This document shows, piece after piece, positions 19,241 through 32,000 of a stretch of DNA of 32,000 nucleotides. Origin of the DNA: Wallemia ichthyophaga EXF-994. Its lineage: Eukaryota > Fungi > Basidiomycota. The notes under the pieces were generated by a model that did not search any database, was not told the origin of the DNA, and worked only from the letters and a program-made list of their open reading frames with translations. The position numbers and the translations under genes are program-made. Each line of letters starts with the position of its first letter. Position 1 is the first letter of the stretch. The stretch spans positions 60,001 to 92,000 of the forward strand of contig NW_008806290.1 of assembly GCF_000400465.1 (NCBI RefSeq). Direction: 5' to 3'.

Positions 19241-20481
19241 ATGTAAGCAACGATAAGAAATTACATTAAAATTAAAATAACGTCATAAGGTCATTTTCTT
19301 ACTCAGATAAGGAGAATGTCTTGTGCTTTCATGGTCCGTTGCTTTATGAGGCTAAGGTGGGTGTATTGTGTGGTACAATTACGTATATTAATACATCCAG
19401 ATACTTGAAAGTGGCTTCAAGGATCTTCTATTCACAGGTGAACAAATCCCTTCTTACTTTGTACATTACAAAGGCTGGAAACAATCGTAAGACACGATGA
19501 GTTTGATTGGTTTACACACTCACAACCCACACGCAGTTGGGATGAATGGGTTCCTGAATCTCGTATGCACAAACTAACCCCTGATAATCGTCAGAAGCAG
19601 AAATCTCTAAAGGAAGCCATCTTGAAGAAGAAACAACCACAATCAAACACTCATTCCCATTCAATCCCCTCTAATAAGAGTAAAGGTAGACAATCTCAAC
19701 ACACTGATAACCCAAGGAAGCGTGGTAGAGATACTGAGGTTTGTTTGACGTTGCTGATTGACTTTTCACATCTGAGACATTCATCATCCACAGGATTCTT
19801 CCCTTGAATCTCAAAAACGTCCTGAAATTAAACTTGTTATACCAGATGAACTTAAGGTTACATTGGTCGATGACTGGGAGTTCATTACAAAGAATAATCA
19901 ACTTATTCCTCTCCCCCGTACTCCTAGCATTCAATCTATACTATCATCCTACAAATCGCACGCATCAAAGAATATTAAAGTTGCCGCTGGTCATCATAAA
20001 TCAAAGAAGATCGCCCTTATTGAGGAAGTTTTGAATGGTTTGGAGGTTTATTTCAATAGAGCAATCGCTTCGAACCTTCTCTATCGCTTTGAGAGACCTC
20101 AGTTTGTTAAAGTGAAAAAAGAGGCTGATGAAAGGCCACAAAACCATCAACTTAAACATATGACTTCTATTTATGGCGTTGAGCATCTACTAAGGCTGAT
20201 TGGTGGGTTTTAGTTAACTAAATTAAATAAACTAATCAAACACTTTCAGTAAACCTCCCCTCAATGCTCGCATACACATCAATTGATGCAGAAAGTGCGA
20301 CCATCCTTCATGAGACAGTACAGAATTTACTCGAGTAAGTTGTAGTGCTATTTCCACCACCAAAACTAACTCTAATCTCTCACAATTAAGCTGGATTATC
20401 GACAATAAGAAACAATTGTTCCTCCCCGAGTACGAGAACTCAAGCCCAAACTACCAAAATCGTGTCAACGCCGGTAGCTAA
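19241..20481 (+). CDS. EAF3: Chromodomain-MRG protein Eaf3/MRG15 (NuA4 and Rpd3S subunit), multi-exon
   Basis: VLCFHGPLLYEAK, YFVHYKGWKQ-WDEWVPESR (chromo barrel), LVDDWEFITKNNQLIPLP, GLEVYFNRAIASNLLYRFERPQF, YGVEHLLRL (MRG domain). Ends EYENSSPNYQNRVNAGS* at 20481. Confidence 0.94.
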
Positions 20482-20623
20482 TCGTGGTAATTTAAAGTGC
20501 AAATATTTAAACCCTATGTAATATACACATAAATGTACTCAAATTAATTTTTTTATGTAACCTCGCTTCTGATTGGCGAGATCCACATCCCTCACGACTT
20601 GGACTCGGACAACTCTTCCAAAA

Positions 20624-21524
20624 ATGTCATTATTTCGTTTAGCCAATAGAGGTCAATTCACCGCTGCAGCGACTTCTACTACTAAAGCTAATGGCGTCCC
20701 TGCCGCTGTTCAGGGCTTGAACTTTGCCCAGACTTACGGAAACGCTGAGCACCACCACCACAGCGGCAGAGCGGATAGTCCAGCTAAGTTTGCCATGGTG
20801 AACGGTTACGCGTCTACTAAGACTGTTTTTAATTGTGGGTTGTACCTGCTTGTTGCCATCGTATCCAACACTCACATCCAACAGCACCAACACCTACCCG
20901 TAACTTCTCCACTTCCTCAAAAGCCTTAGAAACTACCCAAGTCCCTGATTTCTCCCCTTACAAAAGCAAAAGCTCAGGCAACAACAAAGCTTTCTCATAT
21001 TTGATGGTCGGCTCAATGGGTCTTTTAGCCTCAGCTGGCGCAAAGGCAACCGTCACTGACATCCTCTCCAACCTCTCTGCCTCGGCTGACGTCCTTGCCC
21101 TCGCAAAAGCTGAAGTCGATATATCGTCCATCCCAGAAGGCAAGAACGCCACCATCAAGTGGCGTGGTAAGCCTGTCTTCATCAGACACAGAACACAAAG
21201 CGAGATCCAAGAAGCTGACTCTGTCGCCATGAGCGAGTTGAGAGACCCACAGAACGATGCTGATAGATTCGAGACTCGCGAGTGGCTGGTCATGTTGGGT
21301 GTCTGCACTCACTTGGGTTGTGTCCCTATTGGCGAAGCTGGTGACTTTGGCGGTTGGTACTGCCCTTGTCACGGTAGCCATTACGATATCTCGGGTCGCG
21401 CTAGAAAAGGTCCCGCTCCTACTAACCTTGAGGTGAGCATTGGTGATTTATTATTTCATTCTCTGACGTACTTCCTCAGGTCCCTGTCTACTCCCTTGAT
21501 GACGGCAAGTTGACCATCGGTTAA
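20624..21524 (+). CDS. RIP1: Cytochrome bc1 Rieske iron-sulfur subunit, 3 exons
   Basis: Mitochondrial presequence, then [24 protein letters not shown], and the Rieske boxes CTHLGCVP and [17 protein letters not shown]|[14 protein letters not shown] is joined across an intron at ~21433-21479. Confidence 0.98.
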
Positions 21525-23300
21525 GAATTCTAGGTATACACACTGATACTGACAAAATGTAAACTCATCTAAACATCTTATATAATTATCTTTCTTTATC
21601 TTTTTTTATCTTTTTATTACAATACCTCGCGCAAACATTGCTGCCCAAAAGCTTTGTGATGTAGCTGAGTTCGTGAGGTGTAAGGGTGGCTTTAGTGTCC
21701 TACTGATTACCTTACGCTGCTCTCGATCTTATACATTTCCAATCAAAACAATTCTGCTCAACTCATCCCGCAAATGGTCGAGCAATGCAGGGATTTGTAT
21801 AATATCAACATTCAAATATCCAAAGCTGCTGAATCACTCCGATGTACCTTTAAAGCCACCATAGACACAGTATCGAATTACTTGATTTTCAAAGATACCA
21901 CCAGTCACAGCCATCTGATAAATGTGTGTACGCCGTCAGCCATGTGACTAGGAACGAGGGTAGCTGGTGTGTTTATAGGATGACAGTGTGATTTAAATAG
22001 GCTGCTCAATTTTAACAGATTCCTGCAGTACTATAAGTCATTTTATTGAATCAAATCTGCTGAAGGCACCCGGCAATTGACCAGGTTAGTGAATAGACAA
22101 ACGTAGAATCAACGTATACTGACAATTTGAACAATTTAGCAAGGACATCATTTATATGACATTTTCAGCATTACAAAAACTTCTTATTCAACCCCGCTCA
22201 ATATACACAATCTTTGTATCCTCGACTACCGCCTATCTTATCTCGGATGGCTGTGTTCCGAATTTTCATGATCTCCGAATAGAAAAGCTTCATGTACAGC
22301 CCAAAAAATTATAATACTTCGCCAGATTCATATCCCTGAGTTTTAATTCGCGCCCTGCAGGGTATTCGAAATCTACCATCCGTCATCGCTCTGAAGCGTT
22401 TTAGGACAGATATGGATGATTAAACGCTCTTTATCAATAAGTACACACATTTACATCTGATGGATAATACAATAATCCAGGAATGTTAAGTGTCATCCTT
22501 TTAGACACGATTTACAGTTTCTGAAAAGAAGCGTCCACAGGACTTAGTGCTGGCTCCAGGCAAAAACTATTGTCACACTGGAATGTCACAAGCCTAACAA
22601 ATTCATCTCATGCAACAAAAGGTCGGGCTCAGTCCAACTCTGAAATCAGGGATTTGGTTTCTGACCAGTGCATTTCGAAATTTGAAACAACGGGAGTGAG
22701 GTTGTGTTTAAGACTGCAATAGAATGTTAGAAGTTAAAATTGTAGGAATTATAATTTAATACACCAAATCACACTCCCTGCATTGTGGCACATTTAGCTG
22801 GACGAGTTTAGAGCACCTTGATACATGGTTCATGAAAAGCACATCCAATTTATTGTCACACATTTAATCGCTACATAATTATTTCAGAGTCAGCCCAGTT
22901 GGTAATAGCAATGTTTCTATGAATTAATAGGTCATTAAACATGCTATTCTCTCCCGGGAAAAGGAAAGTACGATAAAAGAACCCCTAAGTGTATTGAAAC
23001 TTTATTCACGCTACCCAACACGATTATAGATGTAAAAATTTCAGAAATCAACGATGTCAACGCATACAACAATATCAAGAAGACAAATACGCTATATAGC
23101 TTACTCTCGTCATTTATTTTAAGGTCCCGTATTTCTGCTGGCTTTCTTCATCGTTGCTCCGGTTTTGTGGTCGGTTAGTCACTGATCGCAGGCCATTCAT
23201 GCTACATCCATCGGGGACCATCGTTGTATAACGTCGTGTACATTTACCTTACTAGCCAAAAAGCTTCTAGAAACCATTTTACTCCTGTATAATTGCTTTA

Positions 23301-24267
23301 TCATTTGCGGCGTGGAGATGGTCGAATTTGTTATCTAGTCTGGGTTATCTAAGTAGCCTATTGTATAATAGAAGCCATATTTGATGGAGTTGTACGATTC
23401 GTGTGATCTTAGTCAATTTGATCCGCTCTTCCTGGTTGCACAATCAATGAGTGAAAGGGGGGTTTCTAATCCCGCAATAGAATATCTCCAGTCCGTGAGC
23501 CAAGAAATAGACGCAATATGCCAATGGCACAATCATTTCGCCTGTAACTGCTACGTATCCATACTCTAAAAAATGATGGGAAGGAAGTATTTATTAGTTC
23601 TAACACATACTAAATATTTGTTTAAACATATGTTATGCAAATTAAAGGCAAGATTTCAGATGTATCATTAGTTACATTAACAATAGTGAGGAAAGGCATA
23701 GTTTAAATTACTTGCGAAGACGCGTGACACGCCAGCTACGCCTTTCCTCATGACCAGTCATACACTAACTTCACTATTATCATTCGCGTTATCTGATTTT
23801 ACGCTGTATTGTACAATTCAATCCTCAACCCTACTACAGTCTAAAACTTGTACGAATTGCTAAATTGTAAAGTGTGATAGGTGGAGGTTCTACTTCAGTT
23901 ACACGGTAATAGGACCTTCTATTTTCGATGTTGACTCATTTATTTCCTATCTTAGTCTCCGGTCCCATCCAGACCTTCCCTTGTTTTAACTTCCGAGACA
24001 CTTAGACATTTCAGACTATAAAAGCCATGCTATTGATACAATGTATCTTAAATAATTACTCATGATTCTATCTGCTAGATTTGCTGCGAAAACCTTTGCT
24101 CAAGTACAAGTCTGAACCTTTACGGGTGCTTATCAAATTATGCAATGAAAGTAAATATTTATATGTTTATCATTAACATTCAAAAACGTATAAAAAAGAT
24201 ATATATGGTTGCAATGGCTGAAGAAATCAAGGTCGATAAAGCTGTAACATTATTAGAGAAATCCTCA
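23301..24267 (+). repeat. Left arm of a 967-bp inverted repeat
   Basis: Manual comparison with the reverse complement of 27797-28763 showed no mismatch, from TCATTTGCGGCGTGG at the outer end to GAGAAATCCTCA at the inner end. The ORF track independently shows identical peptides on opposite strands (23381-23569/28495-28683 and 24145/27919). Confidence 0.97.
23687..23761. repeat. Nested dyad cluster inside the left IR arm
   Basis: TGAGGAAAGGCATAG (23687-23701) and CTACGCCTTTCCTCA (23736-23750) are a 14/15 inverted pair. They enclose the odd palindrome GCGTGACACGC and abut ATGACCAGTCAT (23750-23761). Confidence 0.85.
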
Positions 24268-27200
24268 TTATATCTTTTTGTATTTGTAATTATTAAATTG
24301 AGATACATGAACTTGATTTGCAGCCGTCATTAAGATGATTCAAAACATTCTTACTCACAGGCTTAAAGGTGATTAAATCCTGGAAATTGAGTGGTAAATA
24401 TTTTCACGCGTTACCATTTCTAATTCTCATTTCTTGGCAAAGAATTAGAAGCCATTATCAATTTTTATGATGCTGTTGATACTTTGATATGGCATTGGTT
24501 TTCTGTTTTTCAATCCAACTTTGTTTCATGCGTGGATCCGTAAGTCAATTTGTGGATGCGTAGTGACGTTGTCTTCACGTTGAGAATTTGATACGTACTT
24601 ATTTGTTATGATTTGGACCCCAAGCACAGTTTTAGAAGCAAAAGAAGATTGCTCTTATTTATTATGCTCGCTGTGAGCAAACGGCTTGTTATGCTAACTT
24701 TTAGGTTTAGCAGAGCTAAACGGTATTATTAGATATTTTCCACGCTGAACCACTGTCTGTCAAAAAGTGTTTCGTATTGTTCAATGTTAAATTGATGTGA
24801 TTGCTAAGTTATTTTCGAAACAAAACAGCTGCTATAATTTTTTGGTTTTTATAAGTTTGAATACTGTTTTCTATTGTGTTAAATATTTTCAAAACTTTAA
24901 AAATTCACGTTCTCTCCTTAAAACATGATTCAATGTGAATAATATCAACCAACTGCAATCATGTGCGCGATAAAAAACTAATTTTGACTTAGATGTGTAG
25001 ATTCTTTTGTAGAGCTACAAAAAGGATCTCACTGTTTTTCGCACTTGTAGTGTCTCAATATTTAGATTTTCAAATGTTTTCGCAGCAAGCAAGTCATATT
25101 CCAGTTAAACCTCAAAGGTCATAGTATTTATCTCTAATTGAAAACTTTTACTGTCCTGCCTCGTTGAATTGCTTAAGGTCATATCACAGAATCCTGATCC
25201 ATCAAGACCTGAGAGGCGCATACGTCAACGACGGCCGATTTTTGTTAAGATTAGGTTTCTGCTTTCTATGTCATCTTTTAATAATAATATTCTAATAATT
25301 CTATGCTGGGTATTGATTATACGTTCTAGTTTGATACTGCTTTTGTTTCTACTAAGCTATGCATCAGTGTGAATAAATTATTGATAAAACTCTGCTGATT
25401 AGCCTCAAAAACTACAATTTGAATACGACTTCTAATATCGTAAGCTGGTCCTATCATTTATCTTTGCGACACTCATAGGTTTTGTTCATATGAAATATTT
25501 AGCTTAAGGCCCTATTTACACATGATTTTCACTATTAGTTTAAATCGTGACACCACATGTATTGCTTAAATCTAATGTGTGGAAGTTTTCTTATTTCATC
25601 GAGAAATTTCTGCCCCAATATTACTTTCACTATGCCGCAACATTATAGAAAAACTTTCAACATTTTATTGTTTGTTTTGAAGTCCCTTTTTGATGACAGA
25701 AAATTGATGGCTGATTTATAAGCCTCGATTTTTTGTGCTACAGTGGTCATCTCTTGTCCCCTTGATATGTTGATGTAATTATAGAAGAAATATTAATCGG
25801 AGAGGTTGGCATCTATTTAGCTCTGAGTGGTTTGTGGCTCTTTTTTTACTTGTTGCCCTTTACGGTACGTATGAGGTCTTTAGAGAGTCACCGCTTTTAC
25901 CCTACGATATTACCTAACCCTTGTACACACTGAGCATGGTGTGATGTAGGTTCCAAGTAGCTAGAATGTTCACTGCAGACATTTTTACAAATAGAAGCAC
26001 TAAATACAGTGTCTGCCAATTCCCCACTACCATCCTCAGCTTGCCCAATTTGAGATTTATTTTGGAGGTGCTATCAAATTTCGATGGAGTGTTGCTTTTC
26101 AAGCTTACTAAACTTATGCCCTTTAAATTAACTTGTGTGCCGCTCTTAAAATTTCTCAGTGGATCATACTGGGATTTTCCACTGAGACACCCTGAAAAAT
26201 TACTAGTGAGCAAGCTATGATTCTCTTGGTAACCTTGCCTTGTGATTTTATCGGTATTTACACCTTATGTCTACTTTGGAATCATTCCGAAAATCTCAAG
26301 AGTCAGAGGCGGGTTAGAAGGGTCTGTGTCAGCACCAAGAGTTTCCATTGGCAAGATGGAGAATCATTTCCCATCCCTCATGGCCTCAAATTCAATGGTT
26401 AGATTGCATATTGCTGCTGCTATGGTGTCGACCGATATCATATGAATGTTTTTCCTGGTTTTTATAGGTATGGGGCTCTTGAATCCTACGTGATCAATTG
26501 AGATCTAATTAGCAATTCTTCGTACTTTTGAAGCTATCTGTAGTAAGAGTTTCTTTGGTCTTGCATTGATCCTATAGCTATTCCACTGATCGCAATAAGG
26601 AGGCTATTCGCGCAGGAAAGGTGACTCCATTTTGTGTCTCAAACACAGTGAAACTATGTTGATATACTAACTAATATGCTTTGGCTACGATAGCATCACT
26701 TTTACAAGTGTTTCACCGCAATTTTTAATATCAAACACCCTTCTGCCTATCAATTGGTGATGAGCATATACCAGCAACACGCAAAGAATAATTCGGTCAA
26801 AGAGCGTTACATTCAGACACATTAGTTCTATTTAATCATGACTGTTGTTCTACAGTTTGGACCCTTTACCTCCTTATCAAAACTAATCACAAGCCAGACA
26901 AATACTCACAAATCAAAACGGCATATTACACAACTTTTTCATCAGTTACACATGTTCTTTTAAATGATTATGCATACATTTTCATTGAATCGATCGGTGT
27001 GCATGAATTTTGCCATGATGTATAGTAAATTAATTATAATTCTAATTACCTCATAGCTATCGGCGTGTAATTAAAATATGAAGAGGCTATTGAAGTTTAT
27101 CCGTATCTAATTTCAGTTTTCACTAATTAGAATCTAACCTAGTGCTTGACAACTGTTGATTCCTGGACTTTTAAAAGTCCAATGGGCGAAAAAATGGTTT

Positions 27201-27796
27201 ATTCTGTCACCTTTCAGCTTTACCTAAAAGCCAAGCAAATGCATGCCAATTGGCTGAATAGTGTGGGTCTACCGTGATCCTACTTGGTCTGTCTTTATTT
27301 TTGGACATTTTGAATCCGATTGGTCCGATCCGATGTATATTCAGCTCATATTTTAGTTTTGCCTAACTGCAACCTAAACTAGTTCATGTCAATTGGCGGT
27401 AAAGAGAGGGAATTGCAATCCTGATTAAACCATGATCATGCCCAAAATTTTAGAATAAGAAAGTATCAATTAGATTCCCTTTCGGATCGTTTCAACATTT
27501 ATCACTAGTTGTGGCCTAAGTTATTGCACGTATTTTGTCATATTTTAATAGTCGGTCTTTTGAGCTTATGAATAAGGGCATAATTATCTAACAGTTTTTG
27601 GAAAACAAACAGTCCGTACAAATATCTATTCGGTTCACTTATCTCGTTTATCTATCCTAATGCACACATTTAGACTAGTGGGTGTATTAACATTCCAATT
27701 TTTGCATGATGATCTTTGACCTTTTTGATACGAATGACCTCCTAGCGCTTTTCTCCTCTTCCTTTCTATTTCCTGTGTTTCGTAGCCTACAGTGTT
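24268..27796. other. AT-rich 3,529-bp non-coding core between the inverted repeats; candidate centromere core
   Basis: No ORF reaches 100 aa and none resembles a protein family I recognise. Sampled 60-bp lines have 11-16 G+C (24781-24900, 25621-25680, 27001-27060) versus 31/60 in a sampled GEA2 coding line. The centromere label is inference from architecture. Confidence 0.5.
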
Positions 27797-28763
27797 TGAG
27801 GATTTCTCTAATAATGTTACAGCTTTATCGACCTTGATTTCTTCAGCCATTGCAACCATATATATCTTTTTTATACGTTTTTGAATGTTAATGATAAACA
27901 TATAAATATTTACTTTCATTGCATAATTTGATAAGCACCCGTAAAGGTTCAGACTTGTACTTGAGCAAAGGTTTTCGCAGCAAATCTAGCAGATAGAATC
28001 ATGAGTAATTATTTAAGATACATTGTATCAATAGCATGGCTTTTATAGTCTGAAATGTCTAAGTGTCTCGGAAGTTAAAACAAGGGAAGGTCTGGATGGG
28101 ACCGGAGACTAAGATAGGAAATAAATGAGTCAACATCGAAAATAGAAGGTCCTATTACCGTGTAACTGAAGTAGAACCTCCACCTATCACACTTTACAAT
28201 TTAGCAATTCGTACAAGTTTTAGACTGTAGTAGGGTTGAGGATTGAATTGTACAATACAGCGTAAAATCAGATAACGCGAATGATAATAGTGAAGTTAGT
28301 GTATGACTGGTCATGAGGAAAGGCGTAGCTGGCGTGTCACGCGTCTTCGCAAGTAATTTAAACTATGCCTTTCCTCACTATTGTTAATGTAACTAATGAT
28401 ACATCTGAAATCTTGCCTTTAATTTGCATAACATATGTTTAAACAAATATTTAGTATGTGTTAGAACTAATAAATACTTCCTTCCCATCATTTTTTAGAG
28501 TATGGATACGTAGCAGTTACAGGCGAAATGATTGTGCCATTGGCATATTGCGTCTATTTCTTGGCTCACGGACTGGAGATATTCTATTGCGGGATTAGAA
28601 ACCCCCCTTTCACTCATTGATTGTGCAACCAGGAAGAGCGGATCAAATTGACTAAGATCACACGAATCGTACAACTCCATCAAATATGGCTTCTATTATA
28701 CAATAGGCTACTTAGATAACCCAGACTAGATAACAAATTCGACCATCTCCACGCCGCAAATGA
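27797..28763 (-). repeat. Right arm of the 967-bp inverted repeat
   Basis: Reverse complement of 23301-24267; position p maps to 52064-p. Confidence 0.97.
28303..28377. repeat. Nested dyad cluster inside the right IR arm (mirror copy)
   Basis: ATGACTGGTCAT, then TGAGGAAAGGCGTAG...GCGTGTCACGC...CTATGCCTTTCCTCA. Confidence 0.85.
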
Positions 28764-29869
28764 GTGTACAGCGCAAATTATAAAGCAATCATACTAGAGA
28801 CCATTGACACACCAGTCCCATCGCAGTTTACGCATTCCAGCAATGCTGTATTCGACGAGGCGATATCATCTTCACTCGAAAGCCAAGCGATAGGCTAGGG
28901 AGAATGTCCTTGTCACAAAGAATCAAAAGTTAGAAGCACAGATGCATAGATGATGATTAACATAACTGTTTGACTCTACTGACGAGACACAAGAACGGTT
29001 TCCAAAGCTACCGCAATCAGCACTGCGCCAAGGCGGACCGCAGATTTCATCGTACAACGTCGTAGAGAAACGTTACAGAAATAACATTAAGATTCGCGTA
29101 CCCTTGTTGCTGCTGTATCATATATTAGGCAGCCTGAAGAAAGATCCTGTCCCTTAAGCACCTCAGGCTGGCTGGATGGCCATTTATAGACTGTTGAAAA
29201 GCAGCTTTGTTGTGAGTGGTGGTGACCCCATAGAGGAGACAGTTTCACGCACTCGGAAGCAGATACTTAAGCCGATGGGTCCGTGTTGCTCTACGTAACA
29301 AACAATTTTTACCCCAAAGATAGAACACTCAAGGATAGACAGACTGCACACATCTATGCTCCTATCCACGTCGCCTAACGAGATACCTTAGGTTAGCATT
29401 GGAAGGCAATATCAAAGATGCCCACCAGCTATGCACGATGGGTGCGAGTAATAAGAAAGCCGATTTGAACGTTTTGCAGAAGATCTCCAGCAGCGTCTCT
29501 GTATTAGCACTAGAAGAGCTTTGGAGTTTAATATTCACCCAAATGGTACAAGAGAAGGCATCAGTAGGGGATGTACAACTCATCAACAAAGCTGTTGGAC
29601 AGTTGGTGAGCTCTACAAGAAATCTACCAACGGTTGACACTATGTCTATGTTATCTGCTGCCATGTGGGCTTTATTACAGGGCAAGAAGGAGAGTGCGTT
29701 GCGTTTGGCAGCGCAATTAAGTGGTAGAACGGCGTCTTTGTAGTGCCTGAAGGTGTTTAGAATGCTCACCAAGACTTCTGAGAATCTGGACGATGCTGAT
29801 GGGGAGGATGAGATGTTTGATAGTCAAATTGATAGGGAGATTGAAGATGCGACGATTTGGCTACTATAA
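28764..29869 (+). pseudogene. Degraded SREBP-type bHLH transcription factor gene
   Basis: 29053-29088 encodes YNVVEKRYRNNI, matching the SREBP/Sre1/Tye7-type basic region HNxxEKRYR. After a frameshift the frame reads DSRTLVAAVSYIR...GWLDG, like helix 1 plus loop. Downstream helical frame 29339-29743 continues 41 codons past an in-frame TAG. No intact reading frame links these pieces. Confidence 0.5.
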
Positions 29870-30174
29870 CCATGCTTTACTTGTTACTCGAAATGTCTTT
29901 GCCAGGCAATAAAGGGAAAGAGCAGGGTAAGCGATTTATAGGCTCACACTGCGATTGCGCTCTTTGCTTGGCTCACTCTATGAAAGGAAAGGAAAGCTGA
30001 TTGTTGACGAAGCATATGATGCTGCTGTCGATTCTTTGCAAGTAATTGGCTACTAACTCATAGTAATCGAGATATGATGATTGTGTACTATTGGAGTGTA
30101 TTGGAAAATTGATTATTTATAACTCCTTCACATGGGCTTTGAAACCTCATCGACCAAGAACTCGCAGTCCGCAG

Positions 30175-31639
30175 ATGATACAAAAGAAAGCAGCAGAAGT
30201 GAGTTTCAGTGGTTACTTGCAAGCAACTTTCTAATAATCAACAGCGCTTTTGTCAATACGTGAATTCGTCTACTGATCCATTTCACGCAACGCACAGCGC
30301 AGTACAGCAGCTGGAGAGAGCAGGTTTCAAGAAGCTCAGTGAGCACGCTTCTTGGAATGGGCAACTTCAGGCCGGCTCCAAATACTATTTCACCCGCAAC
30401 CAAAGCTCCGTCATCGCATTCACCCTCGGTGCCAAGTACAACGGCAGCGGCGGTCTCAGTGTTATTGGTGCACACACAGACTCACCAAATCTGAGAGTTA
30501 AACCGGTGTCCAATAGAGTCGCCCAAGCTTATCTCCAAGTCAAATGCGAGACGTACGGAGGCGGTATTTGGCACACGTGGTTCGACAGAGATTTGGGTAT
30601 TAGTGGACGCGTAATAGTACAGGAAAGCGAATCATCACCTAAATTTATAAGTAGGCTCGTTAAGATTGATAAACCAATACTGAGGATACCATCATTGGCT
30701 ATTCATTTGGACCGAGAGGTTAACCCATTCAAATTCAATGCAGAAACTCATCTTACGCCTATTCTCGGTCTCGTGAATGAACAGTTGAACTCAGCTGAGG
30801 CCGTCGATGCAATGAAGTCCCAGCATCTCTACGACTCGCACCCAGTCGAGAAACACCACCCAATAATGTTAAAAGCTATAGCTAAGGAGCTCAATGTCGA
30901 AGTTTCTCAAATCCAAGACTTTGAACTGAATTTATTCGACACCCAAAAAGCGACTTTGGGAGGTATTAATGACGACTTCATTTACTCATCTCGCCAAGAC
31001 AACTTGCTGTCTTGTTTTGCTGGTGTAGAAGCGCTGGTCGAATCTTCCAAGAATCTGGAGAACGACGATAGGGTTAGCTGTCTGTGCCTATTTGATCACG
31101 AGGAAGTAGGGAGTGCATCCACATCCGGTGCTGACGGCTCACTCTTGCCTGACTTGATACATAGACTAAGTTCGGAGCTGAGCAAGTCCAACCACGCCAA
31201 AGCATCTTTCGAAGAAATCACTGCTAGATCATACATCATCTCTGCGGATATGGCTCATGCTGTACATCCAAACTACGCAGAAAAGCACGACGACCTGCTC
31301 AGGCCCAAGATGGGAGGTGGTGTTGTAGTGAAAACCAACGTCAAACAGCGCTACGCAACCAACTCAATCACTTCATTCTTGTTGAGCAGATTAGCTGAAA
31401 TAGCTAAAGTCCCTTTGCAGCATTTCAGCGTCAGAAACGATATACCCTGTGGATCAACCATCGCACCTATGCTAGCTAGCAAGACTGGTATTCAAACTGT
31501 AGACATTGGCTTGCCACAGCTGGCTATGCACTCGATACGCGAAGTAAGTGGAAGTGAGGATACCCAGCACCTCATCAACCTCTTCACGTCATTTTACGAG
31601 AACTACGGGCAGGTACAGACCTCAATTGTTGTAGACTGA
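30175..31639 (+). CDS. APE4: Aspartyl aminopeptidase, peptidase M18 family, 2 exons
   Basis: MIQKKAAE|RFCQYVNSSTDPFHA (intron ~30199-30244), then IGAHTDSP, TWFDRDLGISGRV, SRQDNLLSC, FDHEEVGS, ISADMAHAVHPNY, CGSTIAP and LAMHSIRE. Confidence 0.97.
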
Positions 31640-31658
31640 AAATTTATTTTAAAATAAG

Positions 31659-31970
31659 TTAAATCTTTTCATAAAAGTACACATAGCCTTTACCAATAAG
31701 CGAGTTGAGGTTAGTATCAGACTCCTTGACTACCTTCTCGTCATTGAAGAGGATCCACTCATCGTCATGTTTGACGTGTGCGACATAGTGTCCTGAATGA
31801 ACAGACGGACCTTTGTGAGAGATAAATGCCTTGAGTGCGTACTGTGCAGGAGTAGCTTTCGAGCCAGGCTTAACATCGTCTTCTTCCATCGGCGTATTTA
31901 GCACCTCCTCTTCGCCTGGGTCCGAAGGATTGTCGAATAACCAACCGACAGCAACTTCGACGTTATTAGA
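31659..31970 (-). CDS. UBP14: Ubiquitin-specific protease Ubp14/USP5 (isopeptidase T), last exon; rest of gene outside window
   Basis: The exon begins after ...ACTAG with SNNVEVAVGWLFDNP (end of a UBA domain), followed by the USP His box YALKAFISHKGPSVHSGHYVAHV and WILFNDEKV. Confidence 0.9.
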   Translation of the reverse strand, partial: SNNVEVAVGWLFDNPSDPGEEEVLNTPMEEDDVKPGSKATPAQYALKAFISHKGPSVHSGHYVAHVKHDDEWILFNDEKVVKESDTNLNSLIGKGYVYFYEKI

Positions 31971-32000
31971 CTAGTTTGTATGAGCATTATGTAGGAGTAT

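What the first reader, a model, noticed from the sequence alone, without database searches (positions are those of the whole stretch)
23301..28763. IR-core-IR structure in the only gene desert: candidate regional centromere of a compact basidiomycete genome
Seen: two 967-bp inverted arms around a 3,529-bp AT-rich core, inside an 8,650-bp interval (21525-30174) without an intact gene. Every other intergenic gap I measured in the window is 19-660 bp. I see no transposase, RT/integrase motif or tRNA. Established: K. phaffii and C. tropicalis centromeres are inverted repeats around a central mid region, and S. pombe has imr repeats around cnt. The characterised basidiomycete centromeres I know are different: retrotransposon-rich in Cryptococcus and Ustilago, short AT-rich tracts in Malassezia. 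Inference: this is a centromere, and an IR-mid-IR centromere would be an apparently undescribed, convergent architecture for this lineage. I cannot verify novelty without a literature and genome search.
Basis: partly seen in the sequence, partly recalled or inferred. Interest (0 to 1): 0.85.

Follow-up and report, generated by a model that had tools for sequence, protein, structure and literature searches.

The report
Perfect inverted repeat at rearrangement breakpoint
A real, nearly perfect 1-kb inverted repeat around 3.5 kb of anonymous non-coding DNA lies in the one gene-free stretch of this Wallemia ichthyophaga window, at a spot where the gene order was rearranged, so it may be a centromere but looks at least as much like rearrangement debris.

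Summary
The arms are 23301-24267 and 27797-28763, 967 nt and 100% complementary, around a 3529-nt core. There is no intact gene between RIP1 (ends 21524) and APE4 (starts about 30175).

The window is Wallemia ichthyophaga EXF-994, scaffold KE007240.1. The repeat is not an assembly artefact. Contigs of seven other strains run from the unique left flank 119-171 nt into the arm. In six of them the repeat is about 31 nt longer.

Arm and core contain no Pfam domain, tRNA or Rfam family. The longest open frame has no relative.

Three new facts change the context:
- The locus sits at a synteny breakpoint. The block APE4-UBP-VPS8-MLH1-SNZ is flipped relative to RIP1 when compared with W. mellicola.
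- An 850-nt piece of the left flank has a 65%-identical inverted partner at the other end of that block.
- The right flank is a decayed copy of an SREBP-like gene. In a sister species the intact copy lies inverted about 50 kb away.

The core's GC (0.354) equals that of ordinary intergenic DNA here.

No defining centromere property could be tested (CENP-A binding, one locus per chromosome, transcriptional silence). My estimates are about 0.5 for a homogenised inverted duplication in a breakpoint island and about 0.27 for a centromere.

The parts
20624..21524 (+). Left boundary gene RIP1 (Rieske iron-sulfur protein), three exons
   Evidence: The spliced product (introns 20835-20884 and 21433-21479) is exactly the reference protein EOQ99568.1. 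Pfam UCR_TM and Rieske.
21525..22027 (.). Anonymous spacer downstream of RIP1
   Evidence: No ORF, Pfam or Rfam signal.
22028..22879 (+). Element x: the left copy of an old, diverged outer inverted repeat. Its partner x' lies between SNZ and a Glyoxalase_3 gene at the far end of the rearranged block (L029 14802-13957, about window-equivalent 44527-45372).
   Evidence: blastn gives 62% over 879 nt, E 1e-54. Smith-Waterman gives 536/825 identical, score 143 against 14.8 +/- 1.5 for shuffles. It contains an intron-like signal at 22085-22139 that is kept in both copies.
22880..23300 (.). Spacer between x and the left arm. In six other strains the last bases belong to the arm.
   Evidence: 17-nt indel after 23300.
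23301..24267 (+). Left arm of the perfect inverted repeat
   Evidence: The junction with the left flank is seen in contigs of seven other strains.
24268..27796 (.). Core or spacer: 3529 nt of unique, anonymous non-coding DNA, GC 0.354
   Evidence: Stop codons in all frames, and no Pfam hit in six frames. The longest open frame (116 aa, 25917-26264, minus strand) has no true relative among 1.84 billion representatives. Only a weak 66% direct repeat occurs inside it. No similarity to any fetched Wallemia locus.
27797..28763 (-). Right arm of the perfect inverted repeat
28764..28794 (-). Outer 31 nt that belong to the repeat in six other strains. The reference left arm lost 17 nt here.
28811..30078 (+). 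Pseudogene of a Wallemia-specific SREBP-like gene (bHLH-like motif, membrane segment, 270-aa C-terminal domain). It has two internal deletions, at least two frameshifts and an in-frame TAG at about 29741.
   Evidence: Colinear with the intact sister-species gene at L031 1069-3331 (64-73% nucleotide identity over the four matched pieces). tblastn of P0254-P0257 needs three frames.
30175..31639 (+). Right boundary gene APE4 (aspartyl aminopeptidase, M18). It is the first gene of the conserved block APE4-UBP-VPS8-MLH1-SNZ.

Best explanation
The IR-core-IR is a real, species-wide inverted segmental duplication. The arms are about 1 kb (967 nt in the reference, about 998 nt in most strains) around 3.5 kb of anonymous non-coding DNA. 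It sits in a 'breakpoint island': the junction where the conserved five-gene block APE4-UBP-VPS8-MLH1-SNZ was re-joined to the RIP1 flank in the W. ichthyophaga lineage.

The island is layered debris of inverted duplications of different ages:
- an old pair x/x', 65% identical, at the two ends of the block;
- a decayed copy of an SREBP-like gene, whose intact partner in a sister species lies in inverted orientation about 50 kb away;
- the youngest or continually homogenised pair, the perfect arms.

Inferred mechanism: an inverted duplication arose during break repair, either by staggered-break inversion or by fold-back template switching. Intrachromosomal gene conversion between the nearby arms then keeps them identical. 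It should also allow flip-flop inversion of the core.

Shown: the structure, its presence in other strains, the breakpoint position, the older inverted pairs, and the absence of coding or known-RNA content.
Inferred: the origin by repair, the gene conversion, and the lack of a dedicated function.

This reading does not exclude that kinetochore chromatin sits on the same DNA.
For: The IR is verified and present in seven other strains, with an outer boundary that differs by a 17-nt indel. This fits a duplication boundary blurred by mutation and conversion, not a sharp element end.

Synteny:
- W. mellicola has ...EAF3-RIP1-SNZ-MLH1-VPS8 (L028) and M50-167aa-gap-APE4-UBP-VPS8-MLH1 (L002).
- W. ichthyophaga has RIP1-desert-APE4-UBP-VPS8-MLH1-SNZ-1.8 kb-Glyoxalase_3 (L014 and L029).
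- Block colinearity is confirmed by tblastx.

The outer inverted pair x/x' flanks the block. The right flank is a pseudogene copy. In the sister species the two copies are inverted at the two ends of one 54-kb contig.

Arm and core show no Pfam, Rfam or tRNA signal and no homologue. The base composition is that of ordinary intergenic DNA. Polymorphism in the left flank is about twice the genic level, as expected for unconstrained DNA.
Against: A neutral scar does not explain why 5.5 kb of functionless DNA persists in a genome that is 74% coding with 1.67% repeats. It also does not explain why the arms stay identical while the other duplicates decayed, unless conversion is frequent.

Whether the core is inverted relative to an ancestor is unknown. 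No homologue of arm or core was found in any relative, so the source of the duplicated DNA is unidentified.

Exact arm identity may be inflated by the K=21 short-read assembly.
Confidence: 0.5

Rival explanations
1. It is the centromere of this chromosome. A small regional centromere has a unique mid region flanked by a homogenised inverted repeat, as in K. phaffii, C. tropicalis, C. parapsilosis and the S. pombe imr/cnt. CENP-A nucleosomes would occupy the core and decline along the arms. The arms would be kept identical by conversion, and the neighbourhood would be prone to breakage and rearrangement.
For: It is the only multi-kb gene-free region in 32 kb of a very compact genome. A near-identical simple IR around a unique mid lies within a stretch of 7.2-8.6 kb without an intact gene. 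This closely parallels K. phaffii, which has non-transcribed regions of 6-9 kb, virtually identical IRs and unexceptional GC (PMC5010909), and C. parapsilosis, which has unique mid regions flanked by IRs (PMC7263194).

It lies at a synteny breakpoint with a pseudogene alongside. Short centromeres of Malassezia are described as fragile sites involved in rearrangements (PMC10410736). There are no TE remnants.
Against: No defining property was testable. The characterised basidiomycete centromeres cited in PMC10410736 are large and repeat-rich or, in Malassezia, short and AT-rich, and no IR architecture came up in the literature searched.

W. mellicola shows no IR, no sequence similarity and only a modest gap at the syntenic position. 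The gap is 4.2 kb, contains an unannotated 214-aa ORF, and has GC near that genome's average. The RIP1-SNZ junction there is 513 bp.

There is no GC trough below the intergenic baseline and no clear skew switch. The nested older inverted duplications show that this region makes inverted repeats for reasons unrelated to kinetochores.
Confidence: 0.27
2. It is a non-autonomous foldback or long-TIR DNA transposon. The arms would be its terminal inverted repeats, and it would have inserted upstream of the SREBP-like gene.
For: Long terminal inverted repeats around a non-coding interior. The reference genome is reported to hold about 85 kb of DNA transposons. Short-read contigs of all strains break at the arm.
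Against: There is no target-site duplication at either the 967-nt or the extended boundaries: the left flank reads ...TTGCTTTA and the right flank GTGTAC.... Similarity fades rather than ending sharply. No transposase remnant was found. No second copy occurs in about 75 kb of W. ichthyophaga sequence or in relatives. The contig breaks are fully explained by the two local copies at k=120.
Confidence: 0.06
3. It is a functional non-coding locus. One form would be an invertible regulatory segment upstream of the former SREBP-like gene. Another would be a long hairpin or ncRNA gene whose arms pair in the transcript.
For: The right arm ends 48 nt before the homology to the 5' part of the SREBP-like gene begins. 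The neighbouring element x keeps an intron-like signal and conserved islands in both copies.
Against: The adjacent gene is dead in this species. There is no Rfam match at E<=1. No conservation with any relative. No transcription data were available.
Confidence: 0.08
4. It is an artefact of the reference assembly, with a repeat contig placed twice by the scaffolder.
For: SOAPdenovo with K=21 and short reads. Exact identity is what a collapsed repeat would give. The right-hand junction was not recovered in the other strains, whose contigs start at 29575-29669.
Against: Seven independent strain assemblies show the left flank/arm junction. In six of them it carries 31 nt that in the reference exist only outside the right arm, in reverse complement. 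That requires both junctions to be real. There are no Ns in the region.
Confidence: 0.03

Closest known systems
Komagataella phaffii centromeres (2-kb IR + 1-kb mid; PMC5010909)
   Same: A simple, virtually identical inverted repeat around a unique mid region. It lies inside a gene-free region of 6-9 kb, the base composition is not exceptional, and the genome is compact and repeat-poor.
   Different: Here the arms are shorter (about 1 kb) and the mid is longer (3.5 kb). The organism belongs to another phylum. Cse4 binding, one locus per chromosome and transcriptional silence are shown there and untested here.
Candida parapsilosis / C. tropicalis IR-associated centromeres (PMC7263194, PMC7292649)
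   Same: An IR-mid-IR layout with a unique, kb-scale mid region flanked by inverted repeats. Interspecies rearrangements coincide with these centromeres.
   Different: In those yeasts the IRs are shared among chromosomes and are 85-99.8% identical. Here only one locus could be seen, and the arms match nothing else.
Malassezia short regional centromeres (cited in PMC10410736)
   Same: A compact basidiomycete genome, a centromere scale of less than 5 kb, and association with breakage and rearrangement.
   Different: Those are AT-rich tracts described without an IR. Here the GC equals the intergenic baseline and an IR is present.
Inverted duplications flanking evolutionary inversion breakpoints (staggered-break or NAHR models described for Drosophila inversions; from my own knowledge)
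   Same: Inverted duplicate copies sit at the two ends of a rearranged block (x/x'). Pseudogene copies lie at breakpoints, and duplications of several ages are nested.
   Different: The perfect arms flank only a 3.5-kb non-coding spacer, not the rearranged gene block. Whether that spacer was inverted is unknown.

Membership tests
IR-type fungal centromere (K. phaffii / C. tropicalis / C. parapsilosis / S. pombe cnt-imr) | Near-identical inverted repeat flanking a unique mid region of about 1-10 kb | tested here: met
   967-nt arms at 100% identity and a 3529-nt unique core.
IR-type fungal centromere (K. phaffii / C. tropicalis / C. parapsilosis / S. pombe cnt-imr) | Lies in a multi-kb region free of functional genes | tested here: met
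   No intact gene in 21525-30174. The only coding remnant is a pseudogene at 28811-30078.
IR-type fungal centromere (K. phaffii / C. tropicalis / C. parapsilosis / S. pombe cnt-imr) | CENP-A (Cse4) occupancy centred on the mid region | not testable with these tools
   No chromatin data were available.
IR-type fungal centromere (K. phaffii / C. tropicalis / C. parapsilosis / S. pombe cnt-imr) | Exactly one such locus per chromosome | not testable with these tools
   Only the window plus about 45 kb of neighbouring W. ichthyophaga sequence could be fetched. No whole-assembly scan was possible.
IR-type fungal centromere (K. phaffii / C. tropicalis / C. parapsilosis / S. pombe cnt-imr) | Transcription cold spot | not testable with these tools
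Nine arm and core ORFs are absent from the protein collection, which says nothing either way.
IR-type fungal centromere (K. phaffii / C. tropicalis / C. parapsilosis / S. pombe cnt-imr) | Position conserved in related species, even if the sequence is not | tested here: inconclusive
   In W. mellicola RIP1-SNZ is 513 bp apart. The APE4-upstream gap there is 4.2 kb, has an unannotated 214-aa ORF and has no IR. In the sister species a high-identity repeat starts upstream of the pseudogene, but its partner is 54 kb away.
Malassezia-type short AT-rich regional centromere | AT-rich centromere tract. I tested this as GC below the local non-coding baseline, which is my own stricter criterion. | tested here: not met
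   The core GC is 0.354 and the arm GC 0.362. The longer intergenic spacers here have 0.32-0.37.
Malassezia-type short AT-rich regional centromere | GC-skew switch at the centromere (a feature recalled from memory) | tested here: inconclusive
   No clear sign change across 23-29 kb in 500-nt bins.
TIR / foldback DNA transposon | Target-site duplication and sharp element termini | tested here: not met
   The flanks do not repeat. The arm boundary differs between strains by a 17-nt indel, and similarity fades over about 40 nt.
TIR / foldback DNA transposon | Transposase (autonomous element) or several dispersed copies (non-autonomous element) | tested here: inconclusive
   No transposase domain in six frames. 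No other copy in the sequence reachable, but the genome as a whole was not searched.
Inverted duplication at an evolutionary rearrangement breakpoint | Located at a synteny breakpoint between related species | tested here: met
   The block APE4..SNZ is reversed relative to RIP1 between W. ichthyophaga and W. mellicola, and the other flank differs too.
Inverted duplication at an evolutionary rearrangement breakpoint | Inverted duplicate copies at both ends of the rearranged segment | tested here: met
   Met for the outer pair x/x'. For the perfect arms the enclosed segment is the core, and its ancestral orientation cannot be determined.
Mating-type flip-flop locus (Ogataea / Komagataella type) or basidiomycete MAT | MAT genes (HD, STE3, pheromone) at or next to the repeats | tested here: not met
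   The putative W. ichthyophaga MAT locus holds BAP31, an HMG gene, STE3 and SXI1 (PMC6738226). None of these appears among the gene calls or long ORFs of the window.

The most novel reading that the evidence does not exclude
The IR-core-IR is the functional centromere of this W. ichthyophaga chromosome. Wallemiomycetes would then have K. phaffii-like IR-mid-IR centromeres. As far as I could find, that would be the first inverted-repeat centromere architecture in Basidiomycota, arisen convergently with those of Saccharomycotina and fission yeast.
Probability: 0.27. Interest if true: 0.75.

Novelty: new member of a known kind. Interest (0 to 1): 0.45.

Why it matters
If the mundane reading is right, the locus is a clean, small example of how inversion breakpoints in a very compact fungal genome collect nested inverted duplications and a dead gene copy. 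It also corrects the annotation: the reference 101-aa gene is a pseudogene fragment.

If the centromere reading is right, it would give the first centromere model for Wallemiomycotina. It would show that IR-mid-IR centromeres evolved outside the ascomycetes. That bears on the open question of whether inverted-repeat structure itself helps specify CENP-A chromatin.

One ChIP-seq or Hi-C experiment on strain EXF-994, or a self-alignment of a long-read assembly, would settle it.

Tried and rejected
Nothing found:
- Six-frame Pfam scans of arm and core, and of both flanks: one weak chance hit only. The first attempts failed because of stop codons.
- Rfam at gathering threshold and at E<=1, ARAGORN and TRF.
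- Exact look-up of nine arm and core ORFs, and of one further ORF, in the 15-billion-protein collection, to fish out core contigs of other strains: none on record.
- HMMER search of the longest core open frame against 1.84 billion representatives: one spurious hit, from summed weak matches to a tandem-repeat protein.
- Metagenome scan for a 31-mer of the arm: zero hits.

- A concatenated ORF query for the representative search.
- Look-up of the spliced RIP1 as letters. I solved this through the cluster look-up.

Rejected or corrected readings:
- Decayed extension of the IR into the flanks: rejected, since there is no left-versus-right similarity beyond about 40 nt.
- MAT locus: rejected.
- Integrated linear plasmid or invertron: rejected, since no polymerase remnants were found.
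- I first read L024 as showing a contig end at the right arm. This was wrong: L024 is a different species, with 85% nucleotide identity.
- I first read the right flank as a possibly live bHLH gene. It is a pseudogene.

Full report
**Identity of the window.** The aspartyl aminopeptidase ORF at 30209-31639 is 100% identical to Wallemia ichthyophaga proteins and 81% to W. mellicola. The reference scaffold KE007240.1 of strain EXF-994 matches the window base for base from 20175 onwards (L014). The genome is 9.6 Mb, 74% coding and 1.67% repeats. It was assembled from short reads with SOAPdenovo at K=21 (PMC3849046).

**The observation.** The repeat finder gives one inverted pair in 20000-32000: 23301-24267 and 27797-28763, 967 nt, 100% complementary, 3529 nt apart. 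It finds no direct repeat.
- No ORF of 100 aa or more lies between 21514 and 29361.
- RIP1 ends at 21524. My spliced model equals the reference protein exactly.
- APE4 starts at about 30175.
- There is no tRNA, no Rfam family even at E<=1 and no notable tandem repeat.
- Six-frame translations of arm and core, and of both flanks, match no Pfam family apart from two weak chance hits.
- The longest open frame of the core (116 aa) has no real relative among 1.84 billion representatives.

The description is accurate. One point needs correcting: the core GC (0.354) and arm GC (0.362) equal that of ordinary intergenic spacers in this genome. These are 0.32-0.37 for spacers over 100 bp, against 0.46-0.54 for coding DNA. 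'AT-rich' here only means non-coding.

**Is the repeat real?** Exact identity is what a K=21 assembler would give for a collapsed repeat, so I looked at the 21-strain population assemblies. These used IDBA-Hybrid with maximum k of 120 and 150-nt reads (PMC6738226).
- Nine left-hand contigs were fetched, standing for twelve contigs on record. They are colinear with the window from 9574.
- Seven of them run into the left arm and stop at 23393-23440. Their last 119-171 nt also match the reverse complement of the right arm. This is the expected behaviour at a two-copy inverted repeat.
- In six of these strains the match continues to 28794, 31 nt beyond the reference arm. They carry 17 nt (TAATTTGCGCTGTACAC) that the reference and one other strain lack at the outer end of the left arm.

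So both junctions exist. The repeat is about 998 nt in most strains and predates strain divergence, and its boundary is blurred by an indel. I found no target-site duplication.

One puzzle remains. The right-hand contigs of at least 15 strain assemblies start at 29575-29669, about 850 nt outside the right arm. I could not explain this.

**What the flanks are.** The right flank is not empty. A conceptual translation finds four ORF proteins of about 270 aa from other Wallemia genomes. By tblastn these align to 29381-30074 in three different frames and through an in-frame TAG.

In a sister species the intact gene consists of ORFs of 160, 218 and 268 aa (L031 980-3330). This species is Logan run SRR25399871, with 85% nucleotide identity in APE4. 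The gene has an SREBP-like layout: a basic region, hydrophobic segments and a C-terminal domain.

Window 28811-30078 is colinear with that gene. It shows two internal deletions and 64-73% identity over four matched pieces. It is a pseudogene, and the 101-aa gene of the reference annotation is a fragment of it. No intact copy from W. ichthyophaga turned up.

The sister species has two copies in inverted orientation at the two ends of one 54,101-nt contig. One is the intact gene. The other is a truncated copy next to APE4. Both contig ends stop at the same (CAT)n-containing 26-mer. This implies a high-identity inverted repeat just outside the contig.

**Synteny.**
- W. mellicola has ...SF3A2-EAF3-RIP1-SNZ-MLH1-VPS8 (L028), and M50-167aa-4.2 kb gap-APE4-UBP-VPS8-MLH1 (L002).
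- W. ichthyophaga has ...SF3A2-EAF3-RIP1-[desert]-APE4-UBP-VPS8-MLH1-SNZ-1.8 kb-Glyoxalase_3-tRNA synthetase (L014 and L029; L029 is 99.7% identical to the reference).
- tblastx confirms that the five-gene block is colinear, but it is attached to the RIP1 flank by its opposite end. Its other flank differs as well.

Both ends of the block are therefore evolutionary breakpoints, and the IR locus sits on one of them.

The left flank piece 22028-22879 (x) has an inverted partner at the other breakpoint, between SNZ and Glyoxalase_3. It shows 536/825 identical positions and a Smith-Waterman score of 143, against 14.8 +/- 1.5 for shuffles.

The region thus carries three generations of inverted duplication: x/x' (65% identical), the SREBP-like copies (decayed) and the perfect arms.

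**Interpretation.** The most economical reading is that the IR-core-IR is the youngest, or continually homogenised, inverted duplication in a breakpoint island. It would have been made by break repair and kept identical by gene conversion between arms only 3.5 kb apart.

That does not exclude a centromere. K. phaffii centromeres are exactly this kind of object: non-transcribed regions of 6-9 kb with a simple near-identical IR and unexceptional GC (PMC5010909). C. parapsilosis has unique mid regions between IRs, and rearrangements coincide with its centromeres (PMC7263194). Short Malassezia centromeres are described as fragile (PMC10410736).

Against a centromere:
- I found no report of an IR centromere in a basidiomycete in the literature searched.
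- W. mellicola has no IR, no sequence similarity and only a 4.2-kb gap, with an unannotated 214-aa ORF, at the syntenic place.
- There is no GC trough or skew switch.
- The older inverted duplicates show that the region produces such structures anyway.

The decisive properties were out of reach, because only about 75 kb of this genome could be fetched. These are CENP-A binding, one locus per chromosome and transcriptional silence.

My estimates are: scar 0.5, centromere 0.27, functional ncRNA or regulatory locus 0.08, transposon 0.06, artefact 0.03.

**Literature.** No paper in the held library treats Wallemia centromeres or this repeat. The putative MAT locus of the species (BAP31, HMG, STE3, SXI1) is elsewhere.

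**Verdict.** The new context makes an ordinary structural origin the leading explanation. The centromere reading remains a live and cheaply testable alternative.

Noticed in passing
window 28811-30078 (+): An unannotated pseudogene of a Wallemia-specific SREBP-like gene. It has a bHLH-like motif SYNVVEKRYRNNIKIR near 29040, an in-frame TAG near 29741, at least two frameshifts and two internal deletions. The reference 101-aa 'gene' at 29437-29742 is a fragment of it. No intact copy from W. ichthyophaga was found in the protein collection.
   Followed up: yes
window 22028-22879 and L029 13957-14802: An 850-nt pair of inverted, 65%-identical copies at the two ends of the APE4..SNZ block. Both copies keep an intron-like signal: GT(T/A)AGT ... 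(T)ACTGA(C/A) ... TTTAG, at window 22085-22139. They also share islands of near identity, such as GTGCATTTCGAAATTT. They may derive from an unannotated transcribed gene.
   Followed up: partly
window 29575-29669 (starts of L001, L006-L013): Right-hand contigs of at least 15 short-read strain assemblies all begin here. This is about 850 nt outside the right arm and inside apparently unique sequence. Two Logan contigs from other runs begin at 29949. The cause is unknown. It could be a strain difference from the reference, a second diverged pseudogene copy, or an effect of reference-guided assembly.
   Followed up: partly
window 23300/23301: A 17-nt indel polymorphism (TAATTTGCGCTGTACAC) at the outer end of the left arm. 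It is present in six strains and absent in the reference and one other strain. It lies between short direct repeats (ATTGCTTTAT.ATTTGCG), which suggests a slippage deletion.
   Followed up: yes
L015-L023, L006-L013 (strain annotations): The MAKER gene models of the population assemblies fuse neighbouring genes. EAF3+RIP1 is called as one 511-aa protein, VPS8+MLH1 as about 1446 aa, and DS+NKAP+nucleoporin as about 1840 aa.
   Followed up: no
L024 1-26, L031 4-29, L002 1587-1608 and 7306-7329: The motif ATATT..GATTTCATCATCATC marks both ends of the 54-kb sister-species contig, in inverted orientation. It occurs exactly at one W. mellicola site (L002 1587-1608). A weaker inverted match (about 92% over 24 nt) lies 5.7 kb away, in the gap upstream of APE4. 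The motif is absent from the W. ichthyophaga window.
   Followed up: partly
L002 8534-9178 (-): An unannotated 214-aa ATG ORF that looks hydrophobic, as if it spans a membrane several times. It lies inside the W. mellicola 4.2-kb 'gene-free' gap upstream of APE4.
   Followed up: no
L024 / L031 versus L029: In the sister species VPS8 is followed by an ornithine-cyclodeaminase-like gene instead of MLH1. The right end of the block has therefore been rearranged yet again in that lineage, and the neighbourhood looks like a rearrangement hot spot.
   Followed up: no
window 27156-27267 and 27294-27410: A weak direct repeat inside the core (66% over about 119 nt, E 7e-7). It is the only internal structure found in the core.
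   Followed up: no
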